Positions 7,931 through 16,497 of a stretch of 64,000 bases of DNA are shown here, piece after piece. The stretch's first letter is position 1. Every line of letters begins with the position of its first letter. The notes under the pieces were generated by a model that saw only the letters and a program-made list of their open reading frames with translations, was not told where the DNA came from and did not search any database. Origin of the DNA: Laetmonice hystrix (lineage: Eukaryota); assembly GCA_965235115.1 (NCBI GenBank), contig OZ249440.1, positions 19,654,001 through 19,718,000 of the forward strand, in the 5' to 3' direction. Both the position numbers and the translations under genes were made by a program.

Positions 7931-10900
7931 TATTTTATCTAATTGAGAGGACTACTTTGTGAAATATTTCTTTTATTTTTGCATACACCCGAAAGTAGGC
8001 GTATACATACGCAGAGCTCTAAGCCCATGACCATGCAGAATGAATAATGTTTTACCAGTTGTGACCGGAGAGATATTTGACCACTCAACATCTGTCTGTG
8101 AATGATGATGACGTAGGCAGGCGGGCAGCAGCACTGACGTGACCCCTAGCGGGCTGTTCACGGATTACATGCGGCGCTGCTTCCTGCCCTCATCACTGAA
8201 CAGCTGAGCAGCCGACTGGAATGGCGACCGATTGTAAATTGGGTTTAAGTAGAGCTTGAAAGAGGTAGGTTGTGCTCAGAATCATATTAAATCTCTACAC
8301 AGTGGCATTTAGTCGGGCAGAACCTACTTGGTTGCTTTACTCTAGCGGAAGATTGCCGCGCCTCAGCTAGATATTCGGTATGCAACAGACTATTTGTTTA
8401 ACAATCCGATAAACGGTGTATCTCTAGTCAATCGGACAGAGTTCTCTATGGTCAGTTGATATTGATATCATTGTTCTAAGAGTCACAGATCTGTTGGACA
8501 CACTATACCTGACAGTCCATTTGAATAGTAAGTATAAAAGTGTATTTCTAGTCCAATTGTTTGTTGATCAAAATCTGGTGACTATATTAGGAGTCAGAAA
8601 AAGGGCTGAAGGCTATAAGGTACGGACATTTGAAAAGTGAGACTAGGCAGAGTCGATTTGTGTCATCAGACTGGATGAGATTTTACAGAAGCAGTTTCAT
8701 GACGTTTTAGTTTTGGGGCCAGATAATACCCGGCCCTTAAATATCATGAGCTTACTCTCCCTCCACGTTTCTATGAAAGTTCAATCTACAAAGCGGGGAT
8801 TTTTCAAATGGTGTACGTAATATATGCTGATTTAGAAGAAGACCATCTGAAGTTGTGGGATCCTGTAGCAGGATCACGTAATCGTTCCTTCCTTCCAGAA
8901 TGATGGCATGATAATTAGATTAGTTTTTATAGTCCACTTCTTCGTTGTTCTTTGATAAAAATGAAGGTATTTAAACTTTATCTGACCTCTGGCCTCTCAA
9001 AATGTTAAAAGAGTAGTTTTGAGCATATCGTTGAATGGTGCTTGACAATCAACATTCAAACGTAGCTATAATTTAAACGGATTTTCAAACGGCAGGCTCA
9101 ATTACGACTGGAAAGGGCGAGTTTTACGAACCATCGACGTTTATCGATTCTCAGACAGTGTCAGGCTAAACATGATTGAGTTGAAGCCGGTTAACTTTAA
9201 TCGCATTGGTTGAAATTGACTCCGAGCTAATTTTGTGCAAGTTGATTTTGTCTCTGAATGGGAATTATTCTGATCTTCGCAAAATAAGCAAAGAAAAACG
9301 TTGTTCCGCCTGTGTTAAATAGATTATTTTAGATGTTTGCAAACTGTATTATTGGAGGACGCACTCCGGCATCAAACATAGACACCCACATAATATGTTA
9401 TACGAGCAGGGAGTGGGGGTATAGCATTTACTTAGGCATGTTTGGGACAATAACATACCTTTCAGCGCCTCTCTTCAGCTGTGATTTCCTTTATGCAGGC
9501 AGAACTCGGACACCTTATTGTTGTTGAATGGGTGACACATATTTATTCAATATTAAAACAAAAGGATGTAAATATTCAGAAAGTGAGCCCACGCTGCACT
9601 GACTGACAGTGATATACAAGATAAGATTGAAATGTGTCACCACCCAGGGTGAGCCCTCACTGCACCATCCGGGTTAAGAAGAATGTAAAAATTGAATATG
9701 ATTCAAACAGAAGAAGATATAAGTTATCTAAGGATAATATTGTGACGATAGTTTCTCCTGGACAGTGAGCCCACACTGCACTGCCTGGAAGGGTTGTTAT
9801 AAGTTTGAGGAGACTGGGTGTAATAATGAACAAAGTTGTTGTAAGTGGTATAGATTCTGAATTATGTGTCTGTCAAAAAGGGGTAGTAGGTGGCGACAGT
9901 GCCACGAAGAACCGGAATACGGTAGGAGGAAGATGGGGAGGCGGCGGGATTGAAAAATTCGTGGATGTCCGACTGAAGACGTAATGGCGACGATGAGACG
10001 CATGTGGAAGATGACCTTGACCTCAACTGTATATGACGTCACGTGTTCCCCTGGCGGAGGCAGGGGAAATTTGAGTTATCCGGAGAAGTAGCGCCCACTT
10101 GCGGCTTAGATGAGAATTACCGAGTTCTCCTGCATAAAACTCGTCGAGCCTGCGGCTGCAACGTTCCTTTATGCAGGCAGAACTCGGACACCTTATTGTT
10201 GTTGAATGGGTGACACATATTTATTCAATATTAAAACAAAAGGATGTAAATATTCAGAAAGTGAGCCCACGCTGCACTGACTGACAGTGATATACAAGAT
10301 AAGATTGAAATGTGTCACCACCCAGGGTGAGCCCTCACTGCACCATCCGGGTTAAGAAGAATGTAAAAATTGAATATGATTCAAACAGAAGAAGATATAA
10401 GTTATCTAAGGATAATATTGTGACGATAGTTTCTCCTGGACAGTGAGCCCACACTGCACTGCCTGGAAGGGTTGTTATAAGTTTGAGGAGACTGGGTGTA
10501 ATAATGAACAAAGTTGTTGTAAGTGGTATAGATTCTGAATTATGTGTCTGTCAAAAAGGGGTAGTAGGTGGCGACAGTGCCACCAACCTGCCAGTTGGCA
10601 GGTGGAGCCACCAAAAGAAAAAAGAACTGACGACTCAACAACAAAATGAGTCAAATTGACATCTTATCTGGGGTTAAGAGAACCCGAGCTGATCCACATG
10701 GAATGTCACACCAAATCCAAAGGTTGACGATTGAAGGTGCCGTATCCAGGTCTGGTTAAATGGGTTTAACTGTGAGGAGCGGGCTCCACGGGCAGTCTGT
10801 GTGTTAAAAGCCCCTGTACAACTCCAAACCATCGTCTCCCGATGACATGAAACATAAGAAGATCTGGTCAGTAAAGTATGAACTGTAAGTCATTCTCAAG

Positions 10901-11059
10901 GTGAGGTTGAAACTCCGATGTAGGAATTCGACGGAAGATACATTCAGATGAACTTTCCAACTACAGTCAAGGCACGCACACAAGCTAAAACCCACTCGCT
11001 ATATAAAGGAGAATAACGAAACGATGGCGAGAACCATCGGCGAGACGGGTAGTCACTGC

Positions 11060-11600
11060 CAACACTTGCTAAGTGAATGATAAATCGCACCCAAAGGTGC
11101 AACGTCCCAACCACACGGAGCAAGGCACGGCAGATAAATAAAGTACCACTCGCTAAGTAAAAGAAAATGGACCAAACATTGGCACAAATTCAATCACACG
11201 GGGCGAGACTGACGGTACAGTGCAACTTTGCTAAGTGAATGAGAAATCGCACCCAAAAGCGAACATCCCACCACAGGGGCAAAGCACGCACACCTAACAG
11301 TGCAACACTTGCTAAGTGAATGAGAAACCGCACCCAAAGGTGCAACGTCCCCACCACACGGTGCAAGGCACGCACACAGAATAACGTGCAACCTTGAATA
11401 AATGAATTTGAGGAAATATAAGTAATGGAATAATCACCACATGGGCAAAGCACGAACACCTAACAGCGGAACACGTGCTAAGTAAATGAGAAACAGCACC
11501 CAAAGGAGCAACGTCCCCACCACACGGTGCAAGGCACGTACACAGAATAACGTGCAACCTTGAATAAGTAAATCTGAGGAAATATAAGTAATGGAATAAT
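11060..11600. repeat. Four diverged modular repeats inside the split-repeat element
   Basis: TTGCTAAGTGAATGA.AAA.CGCACCCAAAGGTGCAACGTCCC.ACCACACGG.GCAAGGCACG-type modules near 11066, 11229, 11309 and 11477. Confidence 0.85.
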
Positions 11601-11799
11601 GACCATCATATACATCAACAGTACCTCAGATGGATCAAAATGTAAAAAAATGGGAAGGCAGGGGGACAATAACCTGTATCATGGCCCAGAATAATATTAG
11701 GTATACGTAATAATCGATTATTACGATAGAAATATAATTGTCCAAGAATTGAAATACCTGATGAGCCAAAATATAAAACTGTGGTTCCAGAAGAACAAT

Positions 11800-13215
11800 A
11801 CGTACCATGATGTCCAATAATAGAGAAGTAAAGATATAAGAAAACCAATAATAATGACACAATCCCGTGATCCAATCACTAAAGCAGTAGTCTTAATGAG
11901 ATGATTCAACATAAAAAAAACCTGTGAACCCATCAGGACTATAATATATTATGATGGGTAAATATAGATAAGTAAATATATTACAATAATAATAATAACG
12001 ACAGAATATCACTTGTCCAACCACTGTACCAGTGGACCAATAACCTATAACCTAACCAATAACCTATCATGATGTCCCAGTATAGGGAAGTAAAGATAGG
12101 AGAATAATAATAATAATGGCACGGATCCATTGATCCAACCAAAACCCATCAGGACCATAACACATTATAATGGGTAAATATAGAAAAGTAATATATTATA
12201 ATAATCAATAATCATGATAGAAATATGACTTGTCCACCCCGTACCAGTGAACCAGTACTATAAGATGGATAAACTATAAAACTGTGTTTCAATGAACAAT
12301 ACCATATCATGATGTCCCAGTATACGAAAGTAAAGCTATAAGAAGATAATAAAAATGGCACGGATCCATTGATCCAACCAAAACATCAGGACCATAACAC
12401 ATTATGGCACGGATCCATTGATCCAACCAAAACACCAGGACTATAACACATTATGGCACGGATCCATTGATCCAACCAAAACACCAGGACTATAACACAT
12501 TATGGCACGGATCCATTGATCCAACCAAAACACCAGGACTATAACACATTATGGCACGGATCCATTGATCCAACCAAAACATCAGGACTATAACACATTA
12601 TGGCACGGATCCATTGATCCAACCAAAACATCAGGACTATAACACATTATGGCACGGATCCATTGATCCAACCAAAACATCAGGACTATAACACATTATG
12701 GCACGGATCCATTGATCCAACCAAAACCCATCAGGCCCATAACACATTATAATGGGTAACTATAGAAAAGTAAATATATTATAATACTCAATAATCATGA
12801 TAGAAATATAACTTCTCCACCCAGTACCAGTGAACCAGTACTATAAGATGGATAAAATATAAAACTGTGTTTCAAGGAACAATAACATATCATGATGTCC
12901 CAGTATAGGAAAGTAAAGATAAGAAAATAATAATAATGACACGGATCCATTGATCCAACCACTAAACCAGTCTCTCATGTGATGACATGATTCCGCATAG
13001 AAAACTGGGAACCGATCAGGACCATAACACATTATGATGGGTAAATATAGAAAAGTAAATATATTATTATACTAATCAATAATAACGATAGAGATATCAC
13101 TTGTCCAAGGAGTACCAGTGAACCATTACCATAAGATGAGTCAAAATATAAAAAGAAAAGTAAAGATATAAGAATAATAATAACGGCACGGCTCCATTGA
13201 TCCAACCACTAAACC
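11800..13215. repeat. A-rich modules of about 240-290 bp inside the split-repeat element
   Basis: CATGATGTCC...GTAAAGAT...AATAAT..CACGGATCCATTGATCCAACC...CAGGACCATAACACATTA...GGGTAAATATAG modules near 11807, 12068, 12308 and 12891, partial at about 13150. Confidence 0.85.
12355..12750. repeat. 49-bp minisatellite, 8 copies
   Basis: ATGGCACGGATCCATTGATCCAACCAAAACA(T/C)CAGGACTATAACACATT at 12355, 12404, 12453, 12502, 12551, 12600, 12649 and 12698. Confidence 0.97.
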
Positions 13216-15833
13216 AGTCCCTCAGGTGAGACAAAATATAGTCAGATTAAAAGTGTAACCCGATCGTATCCTAACAACTTATAATGGTTACAAACGTAAA
13301 TATATAAATAATAATTATAAATTCAACTGATCCAACCATTAAAGATCAGTCAGTACAGATGAGTTATGAAAAACTGTGAAATCAACAGTACAATAATATA
13401 TTTAATGATATCCAGGGAAGAAGAAAAATTTGAGTAAAATACCCAGGCCAAATTATAAGAATCAATAATACGAATACTGGCCCGGGCACTTGACCGGTAC
13501 ATCAGGTCAGTCGAAAAACCCGTGAAAGAAGGTCGAGTTGTCCGCTAGACAACCTATATAATATAGAATCATGGTTGTCTGCAGGAATTTCTGGTTGACC
13601 CGCACTGTACCAATGCCTGGAACATCCTTTTGCTCTTCTTCTTCTTCTTCCTACGCTCCTGTTCCTGGTTTGTTTGTGTGGAATTGGGACTACCCAGTGA
13701 ACAGGAGACGATTATGTCACCTATCATCCACTCGTAGAGAGTCGAACAATCAGGCGGTCGGCCTGCTGTTCCAGAGCCAAATTTGAGGTTATCAAATGGA
13801 CAACCGTGCCATAAAGGCAGGGTTGTAACTTGTACGACTTCGCTTTATCTTGTCTCGTACAACCGTACAACCACTTACTTGAATGGTAAAAGGTATTAAA
13901 TATATTATAATAAACAGAATAATGTATGAATCCACCGGTCCCAGACCGAACCAGGGCAATCAAATTAAGTAGAAGAAATGAAAACCACTAAACAACAAGA
14001 TTAGATAATATATTATCTGGGGATATAAAGAATAATAATACTCCATGGTGATGATAAAATTTGACTGGTCCTAGACCGAACCATTAGATAAAACAGGGCA
14101 AAGCTACATTAATGAGGAGTTAATAAAGATGAATGCCAGAGCTGAACATTTATTTACACTGGACAGACTGAGGGAACTAAGGTAGATGATCATGATATAT
14201 TGTGACTGTAATATAACGTATAATTATAACGTCTAGAAGGAGATACCGAATTAAATAATATAGTATGGTATAGTAAGTAGATGTATACCGGTACCATAAT
14301 GATATTATACTAGTATAAGGAGGGATTCAAGCCCCTGTACCTGTGGTTAAACGAAAGAATGGTAGGGCTAGAATGGAATCATTGTAAATATTAATATAAC
14401 AGAGAGACCGACGTTGGAGAACGTACTACTTGGATCAGATTATATATCCTATATTATATTAAGGTATAATATAATGTAACTATGACATTTCAAATAAGCG
14501 GCAGGCTAACGTGACTAGGGCTACTACAGCTCCTATAACTAAGTTATAGGTACCAGTACTGCAGTACTACAGAGTGAAAAGTAGTTTTATTAGAGTCAAT
14601 TGAAAACTAACGTTAGGCCTAACACTGTAGATAGAGTGTTGTAACACTAACGTCGTTAGTTAGGCTACGTTATAATATAAGGTTAGGCTATCGTGAATCA
14701 ATAATTATAGCCTAAATTAGGTCACAAGCAACCTAATGATGCCGAATTTAACAGTAGGGCTAGGCCTTTTAATGAGACCCTATCCTACTTAACTTATCGT
14801 CGACAAGACATCTTCCCCTTGAGGCTTGACATGCGGGCGACTCCCAGTCGGGACGCAGACGCGCACGTGTCCAAATTGAAGGACGACGGGCTGCCCTACA
14901 AAACTCTTGAGACGGAATAGGCTACAGGCCCGGCCTGGGTCGTCAAGCGGGGGGAATGGGATCCCGATCGTCACGAAACCATGGTATCAAACGGCAAAAG
15001 AACACGTCCAGCAAAACCAGTGATAAACGTCCCATGACGTAGCCAACACGACAAGGAAGGCGCAAGGCAGAATCAACGCTGCATGCCAAATTGAAAAATT
15101 GGTGGATGTCCGACTGAAGACGTAATGGCGACGATGAGACGCATGTGGAAGATGACCTTGACCTCAACTGTATATGACGTCACGTGTTCCCCTGGCGGAG
15201 GCAGGGGAAATTTGAGTTATCCGGAGAAGTAGCGCCCACTTGCGGCTTAGATGAGAATTACCGAGTTCTCCTGCATAAAACTCGTCGAGCCTGCGGCTGC
15301 AACGTTCCTTTGCGACGTCCCAGTCGCCTGTTTTGGTCGGAACTCTAAGCGTGCCCAATAGTTAGGCCTATCAGATAGATCGCTGTATGTCAGTAGTTTT
15401 TCATTCTGTAACTGATCGGTAAATATTGATAACCCATCCACAGAACCCTAGCCCTGTCTCATTGATGGCTTCCCCCAGACAGGCCTATCTCCTGTCCTCC
15501 TACCTTAGCCCGGACCTCCCAAGACGGACGCTAACTGAATTAGAACGAGGAAGCCAGTGAATCGGCCCCAATTGGGAGGCGCCACCTACCGTTAACACGG
15601 GGAATTGAATTTCGCACTAATCCGATGAAACGATGATTGGATGATGAAAAAAAACGCGCCACGTCGGTCCATGAAATGACAAGTGCCCCGCCCTGATTCC
15701 ATCCCCCTTTTTATCAGTATTATTCTATTTGAAGGCGAGGAGGTCGAGGTGCACAGTAGAAAGGTATCATCAGTGACGTTTGGCCCTTGTCTGCTTGGAA
15801 TGATGAATCAATATTATGTCTTACAACATACAA

Positions 15834-16497
15834 TGTATAATATAAAACTACAACTTATTGATGATTCTGAACCATTGTATACTATAAAACTACAACTTAT
15901 TGATGGTTCTGAACCATTGTATACTATAAAACTACAACTTATTGATGATTCTGAACCATTGTATACTATAAAACTACAACTTATTGATGATTCTGAACCA
16001 TTGTATACTATAAAACTACAACTTATTGATGATTCTGAACCATTGTATACTATAAAACTACAACTTATTGATGGTTCTGAACCATTGTATACTATAAAAC
16101 TACAACTTATTGATGGTTCTGAACCATTGTATACTATAAAACTACAACTTATTGATGATTCTGAACCATTGTATACTATAAAACTACAACTTATTGATGA
16201 TTCTGAACCATTGTATACTATAAAACTACAACTTATTGATGGTTCTGAACCATTGTATACTATAAAACTACAACTTATTGATGGTTCTGAACCATTGTAT
16301 ACTATAAAACTACAACTTGATGGTTCTGAACCATTGTATACTATAAAACAACAACTTGATGGTTCTGAACCATTGTATACTATAAAACAACAACTTATTG
16401 ATGATTCTGAACCATTGTATACCATAAAACTACAACTTATTGATGATTCTGAACCATTGTATACTATAAAACAACAACTTATTGATGGTTCTGAACC
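15834..16497. repeat. 42-bp minisatellite, about 16 copies (two are 39 bp)
   Basis: Unit TATACTATAAAACTACAACTTATTGATG(A/G)TTCTGAACCATTG; explains ORFs 15683-16630 and 15814-16425. Confidence 0.97.

What the first reader, a model, noticed from the sequence alone, without database searches (positions are those of the whole stretch)
10120..10187. Recombinase-site-like junction with a half-site at each element end
Seen: CCGAGTTCTCCTGCATAAA (10120-10138) and TTTATGCAGGCAGAACTCGG (10168-10187) are inverted repeats (one-base indel) 29 bp apart. TTCCTTT (10164-10170), where A and B overlap, abuts the right arm. One arm sits at each end (9490-9509, 15261-15279) beside the same core. Established: tyrosine recombinases act on inverted binding arms around a short crossover region. 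Inference: B1/A2 is an internal copy of the circle junction, and integration split such a site at TTCCTTT.
Basis: partly seen in the sequence, partly recalled or inferred. Interest (0 to 1): 0.75.

Follow-up and report, generated by a model that had tools for sequence, protein, structure and literature searches.

The report
Ngaro retrotransposon circle-junction hairpin
The flagged 68 bases are the internal copy of the joined ends of a young, gene-less Ngaro-type jumping gene, a kind that inserts with a tyrosine recombinase.

Summary
The arms at 10120-10138 and 10168-10187 are inverted repeats 29 bp apart, and one copy of each sits at an element end.

The element (9486-15311) is a non-autonomous Ngaro-type YR retrotransposon whose sense strand is the window's minus strand. 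Its layout is A1, a 43-bp spacer, B1·A2, an ORF-less interior and B2. The genome holds about 35 loci. A related autonomous family (80% identical over the shared end repeats, ~1.1 kb) encodes SGNH hydrolase, RT/RNase H and an intact YR.

The internal circle-junction reading matches the published DIRS/Ngaro model, but the 7-bp core does not hold. Across 22 ends only TTT is shared. Neighbouring satellite units show an empty site with a single TTT. Targets prefer C-n-TTT-A-y-G, and four loci hit the same satellite position.

The arms are not a lox/FRT-like pair, because the crossover lies at the inner edge of one arm. They are the outer stem of a two-tier hairpin (outer stem, 28-33 nt spacer, inner stem) found in nine families from five assemblies. 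In the tested pairs, 96% of cells are paired and 11 of 14 pairs carry compensatory changes. The sense strand has 28 G·U pairs against 4 on the antisense strand.

The element is a known kind. The hairpin, the target logo and the end asymmetry may be new, but I could not read the primary Ngaro papers. No sequencing reads could be examined.

The parts
9486..15311 (-). Whole non-autonomous Ngaro-type element (5826 bp). The sense strand is the window minus strand.
   Evidence: Split direct repeats. No ORF over about 100 aa. The 80%-related autonomous copy L049 has all its ORFs on the minus strand of the same orientation.
9486..9905 (-). Repeat A1 (canonical B2, the 3' terminal repeat of the sense strand).
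   Evidence: 100% identical to 10164-10583.
9490..9509 (.). Terminal copy of the A arm (TTTATGCAGGCAGAACTCGG).
   Evidence: Exact match. Present at the left end of 22 of 22 readable copies.
9906..9948 (-). Unique 43-bp spacer between A1 and B1. It is C-rich on the sense strand, with the motif CCnCCnCCnnCCCC.
   Evidence: Not repeated within the element. The same position and the same motif occur in 7 families.
9949..10170 (-). Repeat B1 (canonical A2). It contains an E-box, a CRE palindrome and a TATA-like run at 10027-10045, read on the sense strand. The promoter role is inferred only.
   Evidence: 222 bp, 99.5% identical to 15090-15311. The motifs were read directly from the sequence.
10120..10138 (.). 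B arm, one strand of the outer stem of the junction hairpin.
10142..10163 (.). Inner stem-loop in the 29-bp spacer (CGTCGAGCC / TGC / GGCTGCAACG).
   Evidence: MFE folds. AGCC/GGCT becomes AACC/GGTT in L050. 4 of 4 tested inner pairs carry compensatory changes across families.
10168..10170 (.). Crossover trinucleotide TTT (AAA on the sense strand).
   Evidence: The only bases shared by left ends, right ends and the internal junction. The empty satellite site has a single TTT.
10168..10187 (.). A arm, the other strand of the outer stem.
10164..10583 (-). Repeat A2 (canonical B1).
10584..15089 (-). Non-coding interior built largely of tandem repeats (166 bp x2, 49 bp x8). Only about 200 bp are related to the autonomous relative.
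15090..15311 (-). Repeat B2 (canonical A1, the 5' terminal repeat). It holds the subterminal B arm at 15261-15279 and ends with TTCC + TTT (15305-15311).

Best explanation
10120-10187 is the internal B1·A2 junction of a young, non-autonomous Ngaro-type tyrosine-recombinase retrotransposon (9486-15311, sense strand = window minus strand). This junction is the element's stored copy of the sequence formed when its two ends are joined.

New copies are inserted, without target duplication, at a TTT. The break lies between ...GTTCC and TTTATGCAGG on the window plus strand. The enzyme is presumably the YR of a related autonomous family. The target preference is A-rich, then C-n-TTT-A-y-G, which mimics about 8 bp of the donor junction.

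The two inverted arms are the outer stem of a conserved two-tier hairpin: outer stem ending in AAA·TTT, a 28-33 nt spacer, and an inner stem. The hairpin is complete only when the B end and the A start are joined. My best reading is that it acts in a single-stranded sense-polarity nucleic acid, either the genomic RNA or plus-strand cDNA. There it would hold or mark the joined ends, through end juxtaposition, a template jump, or as a recombination substrate. I do not read it as a duplex lox/FRT-type pair of binding arms.

Shown here: the element's architecture, the TTT break point, the empty site, the target bias, and the hairpin's conservation, covariation and strand bias. Inferred: which molecule folds, and what the hairpin does.
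For: Architecture. The layout A1, 43 bp, B1·A2, interior, B2 is seen here and in 20 composite loci. It equals the published Ngaro A1-[ORFs]-B1A2B2 on the minus strand (PMC8547959, PMC9210276).

Related autonomous element. L049 has SGNH/GDSL hydrolase, a 362-aa ORF, RT/RNase H and a YR with R..HxxR..W..Y. It shares only the terminal repeats and about 200 bp with the window copy.

Break point. Left ends read NNNN-TTT-ATGCAGG in 22 of 22 copies. Right ends read GTTCC-TTT-flank.

Empty site. Uninterrupted neighbouring units of an ~840-bp satellite read ...aaacc TTT acggc... with one TTT, where L032 and L034 carry the element.

Target choice. C at -2 in 12 of 20 sites (p = 1e-4), A at +1 in 11 of 20, G at +3 in 14 of 20 (p = 2e-6). 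Four loci on four chromosomes sit at the same satellite position. Their flanks are 82-91% alike while the elements are at least 98% alike.

Hairpin. It is present in 9 families from 5 assemblies, with YR identity down to 37% and diverged arm sequences. Folds give z from -3.3 to -8.4 on the sense strand. In 14 tested pairs, 96% of cells are paired against 81% in shuffles. 11 of 14 pairs carry changes on both sides, with 0 of 500 shuffles reaching that, and slid controls give 35-53% paired. The sense strand is more stable than the antisense strand in 8 of 9 families and equal in one, with 28 G·U pairs against 4.

Literature. The 3-bp circular-junction model is published (PMC3266345, PMC7192593).
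Against: The folding molecule and the role of the hairpin are therefore inference.

The inner 10 bp of the arms are invariant in the three closest families, and targets copy the first 3 nt of the A arm. Both fit sequence-specific protein binding to duplex DNA as well.

The nine families fall into only about six independent lineages, and the tested structure was derived from the same sequences.

A full-length circle would carry two identical junctions, yet only one is ever used (20 of 20 composites). The simple circle model does not explain this.

The trinucleotide asymmetry rests on 5 variants. The four in the window's family are in older copies and could be later mutations.

Goodwin & Poulter 2004 and Poulter & Butler 2015 could not be read.
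Confidence: 0.7

Rival explanations
1. The two arms are the two duplex binding half-sites of a lox/FRT-like core site for the cognate YR, with TTCCTTT as the crossover or overlap region that integration splits.
For: Inverted arms flank the junction. The inner 10 bp of both arms are identical in WIN, L049 and L050 although the repeats are otherwise about 80% alike. Targets resemble the donor at -2 and at +1 to +3, as expected if a recombinase reads the sequence next to the crossover.
Against: Only TTT is shared among 22 ends. The arms are 28-33 bp apart in all nine families, and the crossover is at the inner edge of one arm, not between two arms 6-8 bp apart. The spacer has its own covarying stem, and the G·U pairs are strand-biased; neither is needed for duplex binding. 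No arm-like sequence was seen about 30 bp to the left of the satellite target by eye, and targets have no excess hairpin potential.
Confidence: 0.15
2. An RNA-level switch. The outer stem hides a poly(A)-signal-like hexamer (CAUAAA or UAUAAA, at the 3' end of the sense-strand 5' arm) at the internal junction, so transcription reads through. At the true 3' end the partner arm is absent and the signal is exposed. The inverted repeat would then serve transcript 3'-end choice rather than recombination.
For: The last six sense-strand bases of the terminal repeat are CAUAAA or UAUAAA in 7 of 9 families. In two of these, L060 and L061, the hexamer ends one base before the repeat end. That these are recognised weak poly(A) hexamers is from my own knowledge, not tested here. 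The hexamer is fully paired in every fold, and the structure is sense-strand biased. No consistent upstream AAUAAA was seen when reading the terminal 50 nt.
Against: L051 (UGUAAA) and L052 (CACAAA) lack a recognised hexamer. AAA/TTT is equally explained as the recombination trinucleotide that is common in DIRS-order elements (PMC3266345, PMC9210276). No 3'-end data are available. The model does not explain the inner stem or the target bias.
Confidence: 0.15
3. There is no special site. The junction is simply where two related elements (a short A-43-B unit and a long A-interior-B unit) happen to lie in tandem, and the inverted repeat is a chance or selfish palindrome.
For: Solo A-43-B units (L025, L028) and one A-interior form without the leading unit (L030) exist on their own.
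Against: The same order is found in 20 of 20 composite loci. It is also found in autonomous families from five assemblies, each with a 28-53 bp spacer, and it is the published canonical Ngaro/VIPER layout (PMC8547959, PMC6681497). No arm matches are expected by chance, and the covariation beat 500 of 500 shuffles.
Confidence: 0.02

Closest known systems
Ngaro superfamily of the DIRS order (tyrosine-recombinase retrotransposons; Goodwin & Poulter 2004, as cited in PMC8547959 and PMC9210276)
   Same: Split direct repeats A1-[interior]-B1A2B2. RT/RNase H plus YR with no methyltransferase domain. An optional SGNH hydrolase ORF. Solo AB units. Insertion without target duplication.
   Different: The window copy has lost all ORFs. 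In these invertebrate-type families the hydrolase ORF lies first, not after the YR as described for amphibians (PMC9210276). I did not find the conserved junction hairpin, the C-rich unique spacer or the target logo described in the papers I could read.
DIRS-1 internal complementary region (ICR) and 3-bp circular junction (Cappello 1985; PMC3266345; PMC7192593)
   Same: An internal sequence stores the joined ends. A trinucleotide (NTT; TTT in Xenopus DIRS) is shared with the target. The ICR is experimentally essential for retrotransposition, and the intermediates seen were linear single-stranded cDNA.
   Different: The DIRS-1 ICR is inverted relative to the termini, so a single strand can use it as a splint. 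Here the stored junction is a direct copy, and the inverted arms flanking it are what can pair.
VIPER / SIRE of trypanosomes (PMC6681497)
   Same: SIRE equals A2, about 30 bp of unique sequence, then B2. This is the same unit as the A-43-B unit here, which also occurs solo.
   Different: It is a different host group with a different ORF order. No junction hairpin is reported in the paper read.
Folded single-strand YR sites: integron attC and CTX phage attP(+) (from my own knowledge, not tested here)
   Same: Imperfect inverted repeats that fold on one preferred strand, with an unpaired base in the stem. The crossover is at a short conserved triplet in the stem. A single strand exchange would give the one-sided inheritance of the trinucleotide seen here (0 of 22 ends against 4 of 21 in the WIN family, plus one in L060).
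   Different: Those systems are bacterial, with no reverse transcription. In attC the crossover is at the base of the stem, whereas here it is at the loop-proximal end. No biochemical evidence exists for any Ngaro YR.
loxP / FRT / dif core sites
   Same: Inverted repeats next to the point of strand exchange, with a YR enzyme.
   Different: Those sites have 11-13 bp arms around a 6-8 bp overlap in which both cleavages fall. Here the arms are 28-33 bp apart and the crossover is at one arm edge.

Membership tests
Ngaro-type YR retrotransposon (DIRS order) | Split direct repeats in the order A1-[interior]-B1-A2-B2 | tested here: met
   On the minus strand: 15311-15090, interior, 10583-10164, 10170-9949, 43 bp, 9905-9486. 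The same order is found in 20 of 20 composite loci.
Ngaro-type YR retrotransposon (DIRS order) | Encodes RT/RNase H and a tyrosine recombinase | tested here: not met
   The window copy has no ORF over about 100 aa, so it is a non-autonomous derivative. The 80%-related L049 encodes RVT_1/RNase H and a YR with an intact R..HxxR..W..Y.
Ngaro-type YR retrotransposon (DIRS order) | No methyltransferase domain, which separates Ngaro from DIRS1/PAT; optional SGNH hydrolase ORF | tested here: met
   Pfam scans of the four L049 ORFs give a GDSL/SGNH lipase and no methyltransferase. The same gene content appears in relatives from other assemblies.
Ngaro-type YR retrotransposon (DIRS order) | Insertion at a short trinucleotide shared with the circle junction, with no target-site duplication | tested here: met
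   The empty satellite units have one TTT, and the filled sites have TTT at both ends and at the internal junction.
lox/FRT-like duplex core site | Two inverted 11-13 bp arms flanking a 6-8 bp overlap that contains both cleavage points | tested here: not met
   Arm spacing is 28-33 bp in nine families, and the break is at the inner edge of one arm.
lox/FRT-like duplex core site | The recombinase binds the arms as duplex DNA | not testable with these tools
   This needs EMSA or footprinting. Only indirect hints are available: invariant inner arm bases and a target that mimics ATG.
Folded single-strand YR site (attC / CTX attP type) | Imperfect inverted repeat whose folded form is favoured on one strand | tested here: inconclusive
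   The sense strand is more stable in 8 of 9 families, with 28 G·U pairs against 4, and there is a conserved unpaired base after 10 bp in WIN, L049 and L050. RNA and plus-strand DNA cannot be told apart.
Folded single-strand YR site (attC / CTX attP type) | A single strand exchange resolved by replication | tested here: inconclusive
   Trinucleotide variants occur only at the canonical 5' end: 4 of 21 against 0 of 22 ends in the WIN family, plus 1 in L060. A hand-computed one-sided Fisher test gives about 0.05. The variant copies in the window's family are older, so later mutation is not excluded.

The most novel reading that the evidence does not exclude
The junction hairpin is the real substrate of a eukaryotic YR retrotransposon. 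A linear or circular single strand of sense polarity folds so that the terminal arm pairs with the subterminal arm. This places the two ends side by side, and the YR makes a single strand exchange at AAA|GG with a duplex target, which replication then resolves, as for integron cassettes or CTX phage. That would explain three observations: only the end-to-end junction is used and never its identical internal copy; the trinucleotide at one end comes from the target; and the structure is strand-biased.
Probability: 0.2. Interest if true: 0.8.

Novelty: new member of a known kind. Interest (0 to 1): 0.5.

Why it matters
How DIRS-order elements finish their life cycle is still largely a paper model, and the only experimental system is DIRS-1 of Dictyostelium. 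This genome offers a very young, multi-copy, ORF-less Ngaro derivative reduced almost to its end repeats. That reduction narrows where the cis-acting sequences must lie.

Four results give concrete, falsifiable handles for biochemistry with the encoded YR and for long-read searches for intermediates:
- The break point is mapped to one phosphodiester.
- There is a measurable target logo, and one satellite position was hit four times.
- A covarying, strand-biased hairpin spans the joined ends.
- Inheritance of the junction trinucleotide is one-sided.

If the hairpin proves to be a folded recombination site, it would be a eukaryotic counterpart of integron attC sites.

Tried and rejected

2. More families from this genome. 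I used the look-up of encoding contigs on homologues instead. P0001 gave no DNA, and L053, L054, L055, L057 and L059 were too decayed to define junctions.

3. A 7-8 bp overlap model (CCTTTATG). Rejected because positions -2/-1 at left ends always follow the target and +1 to +3 always follow the element.

4. An inner 5-bp inverted repeat, CTGCA(N11)TGCAG, around TTT. It is present only in the WIN family and is not kept in L049 or L050.

5. Hairpin-prone targets. Not supported: mean dG is -15.7 against -17.4 for control TTT windows, p = 0.71.

6. Known RNA family. Rfam gave no match at E <= 1.

7. Tandem insertion of two elements. Rejected (see rival explanations).

8. One literature search was badly framed and returned nothing useful. 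Goodwin & Poulter 2004 and Poulter & Butler 2015 are not held.

9. The MAFFT alignment of 83-nt segments misplaced three families. I re-cut the segments at equivalent ends before counting pairs.
Full report
**Observation**

They are complementary except for one unpaired C, and 29 bp separate them. Each 24-nt arm pattern occurs exactly twice in the window, once at the junction and once at an element end (9486-9509 and 15261-15284). None is expected by chance.

The repeat finder and a pairwise alignment define the parts:
- A1 9486-9905 and A2 10164-10583 are 420 bp and 100% identical.
- B1 9949-10170 and B2 15090-15311 are 222 bp with one mismatch.
- A unique 43-bp spacer lies at 9906-9948.
- In this copy A2 and B1 overlap by TTCCTTT.

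**What the element is**

The order A1, spacer, B1·A2, interior, B2, read on the minus strand, is the Ngaro layout A1-[interior]-B1A2B2 (PMC8547959, PMC9210276, PMC4157794). The interior has no ORF above about 100 aa and consists largely of tandem repeats.

The window lies at C5:19654001-19718000 of a 627-Mb eukaryotic assembly. An exhaustive pattern census finds 67 A starts. These make 20 composite loci, with A starts about 678 bp apart, plus about 15 single ones. Many copies are 99-100% identical in A and B, so the family is young.

One locus, L049, is about 80% identical in the repeats and carries four ORFs on the minus strand:
- a GDSL/SGNH hydrolase;
- a 362-aa ORF;
- RT/RNase H;
- a 308-aa YR.

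The YR's C-terminus aligns to the catalytic region of Cre and shows R..HSFR..W..Y. The window copy shares only the repeats and about 200 bp with L049. It is therefore a non-autonomous derivative reduced to its cis-acting ends.

A second autonomous family, with a YR at C18:12369700, has an A arm identical to the window's for 23 nt and may be the real helper. I could not fetch it.

I reached the same view independently.

**Where insertion happens**

I lined up both ends of 22 copies.

| Site | Sequence | Count |
|---|---|---|
| Left end | four variable bases, TTT, ATGCAGG | 22 of 22 |
| Right end | GTTCC (or GTGCC), TTT, flank | 17 of 21 |
| Right end, variant trinucleotide | TTA, TTG, TAT or TGT | 4 of 21 |
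| Internal junction | TTT | all copies |

The common core is therefore TTT. The TTCC in this copy's left flank is not general.

A true empty site can be read. L032 (C10) and L034 (C6) sit in arrays of an ~840-bp satellite. The uninterrupted neighbouring units read ...ttaattaaacc TTT acggcaaacag... with a single TTT, whereas the filled units have TTT on each side of the element. This is what the published model predicts: a 3-bp circular junction recombining with an identical genomic trinucleotide, with no duplication (PMC3266345, PMC7192593).

**Target choice**

Twenty reconstructed targets show this pattern:

| Position | Preference | Count | p |
|---|---|---|---|
| -10 to -3 | A-rich | - | - |
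| -2 | C | 12 of 20 | 1e-4 |
| +1 | A | 11 of 20 | - |
| +2 | pyrimidine | - | - |
| +3 | G | 14 of 20 | 2e-6 |
| +5 | C | 10 of 20 | - |

The donor junction reads CC TTT ATG, so targets mimic about 8 bp of the donor.

Four loci on four chromosomes lie at the same position of the same satellite: L032, L034, the solo unit L028, and L030. Their flanks are 82-91% alike while the elements are 98-99% alike. These are therefore separate hits on a favoured site. The satellite gave 2133 first-look candidates in the genome. Targets do not fold better than control TTT windows.

**The arms are part of a conserved hairpin**

L050 comes from the same genome and its YR is 63% identical. It has the same 43-bp spacer, a 3-bp overlap and 29-bp arm spacing. 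It also carries paired changes in both the outer arms (AGAAC/GTTCT to AAAAC/GTTTT) and a small stem inside the spacer (AGCC/GGCT to AACC/GGTT).

Homologues of the YR occur widely. The named ones are lophotrochozoan. Six further loci from four other assemblies gave intact split repeats: L051, L052, L056, L058, L060 and L061 (47, 48, 55, 56, 69, 70).

Reading the sense strand, each locus has:
- a terminal arm ending in AAA (AAAT in two), which is the junction;
- a 28-33 nt spacer with its own 4-9 bp stem;
- an arm beginning TTT.

The arm sequences differ between families (ATGCAGG, ACACTCAG, GTGAAGAG, ATATAAAAA, ATGCGAAATAAC).

All nine junctions fold into the same two-tier hairpin, with sense-strand z-scores from -3.3 to -8.4. 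I aligned segments cut at equivalent ends and tested 10 outer and 4 inner pairs:

| Measure | Observed | Controls |
|---|---|---|
| Cells forming a standard pair | 96% | 81% in shuffles; 35-53% when partners are slid |
| Pairs with changes on both sides | 11 of 14 | shuffled mean 4.6 |
| Shuffles reaching any of the five measures | 0 of 500 | - |

The sense strand is the more stable one in 8 of 9 families and equal in the ninth. It holds 28 G·U pairs against 4 on the antisense strand.

Two caveats apply. The nine families represent about six independent lineages. The tested structure was also derived from these same sequences. Rfam has no match.

The junction is indeed an internal copy of the joined ends, and each end carries one arm. 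The geometry, however, is not that of a lox/FRT-type site. The crossover lies at the loop-proximal end of the outer stem, between ...GTTCC and TTTATGCAGG on the window plus strand, and not midway between arms 6-8 bp apart.

The inner covarying stem and the strand bias argue that the pairing matters in a single strand of sense polarity, either genomic RNA or plus-strand DNA. Such folding would place the 3'-terminal arm on the subterminal arm and so bring the two ends side by side. The internal junction carries both arms simply because it copies both ends.

Sequence-specific reading of the duplex is not excluded and may coexist with folding. The inner 10 bp of the arms are invariant in the three closest families, and targets copy the first bases of the A arm.

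A separate RNA-level idea is that the stem hides a CAUAAA or UAUAAA poly(A)-like hexamer at the internal junction. I keep this as a rival and could not test it.

**Two things the simple circle model does not explain**

First, a full-length circle would contain two identical junctions, yet all 20 composite loci have the same order.

Second, every trinucleotide variant lies at the canonical 5' end. There are four in the window's family (0 of 22 at the other end; a hand-computed one-sided Fisher test gives about 0.05) and one in L060. This suggests that this end's trinucleotide comes from the target.

Both points would follow from an open-ended or single-stranded intermediate with one strand exchange. 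They also fit the linear single-stranded cDNA seen for DIRS-1 (PMC7192593). This is inference only.

**Limits**

- The primary Ngaro papers are not held, so I cannot say the hairpin is undescribed. No held paper that mentions Ngaro together with 'hairpin' was, judging by its title and abstract, about a junction hairpin.

**Verdict**

The element is a new, non-autonomous member of a known kind. The hairpin, the target logo and the end asymmetry are useful, testable details. Interest is 0.5.

Noticed in passing
window 9906-9948; L050:1141-1183; L051:10212-10247; L052:10164-10191; L056:9972-10023; L058:9935-9973; L060:10052-10104: The unique spacer between the last two repeats is 28-53 bp long. 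In seven families from four assemblies it starts with the same C-rich sense-strand motif (CCnCCnCCnnCCCC). On the antisense strand it is a G-rich purine tract. It may be a primer-related cis element.
   Followed up: partly
L030 (G000:C21:3187013 onward): This copy has the form flank-TTT-A-interior, without the leading A-43-B unit. It lies at the same satellite position as L032, L034 and L028. It arose either by A1 x A2 recombination or by insertion of a one-unit circle.
   Followed up: partly
L032 and L034 flanks; G000:C10:14690085-14691604: An ~840-bp satellite gave 2133 first-look candidates in the genome. Units within an array are 97-99% alike, while arrays on different chromosomes are 82-91% alike. 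One position of the unit is a hot spot for this element.
   Followed up: partly
window 10027-10045 and 15168-15186: Repeat B carries CACGTG (E-box) overlapping TGACGTCA (CRE palindrome), followed on the sense strand by a TATA-like run. This is a likely internal promoter, which would start transcripts about 165-170 nt into the 5' repeat, downstream of the arm.
   Followed up: no
G000 genome-wide: There are 131 matches to the Ngaro YR, from 100% down to about 25% identity, many with open frames. This genome holds a large and diverse population of YR retroelements. In these families the SGNH hydrolase ORF comes first, not after the YR as reported for amphibians.
   Followed up: no
L052:2390-2440: The 5' flank of this Ngaro copy is a diverged copy of the element's own 3' end. 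This suggests insertion next to, or into the junction of, an older copy.
   Followed up: no
window 15834-16497: A 42-bp minisatellite, 16 copies at 96% identity, lies about 520 bp beyond the element's right end. A spurious 315-aa ORF runs through it.
   Followed up: no
window 11269-11605 and 12355-12750: The element's interior holds 166-bp x2 and 49-bp x8 tandem arrays. Differences in element length between copies (4.9-7.0 kb) may reflect expansion or contraction of these arrays; this was not measured.
   Followed up: no
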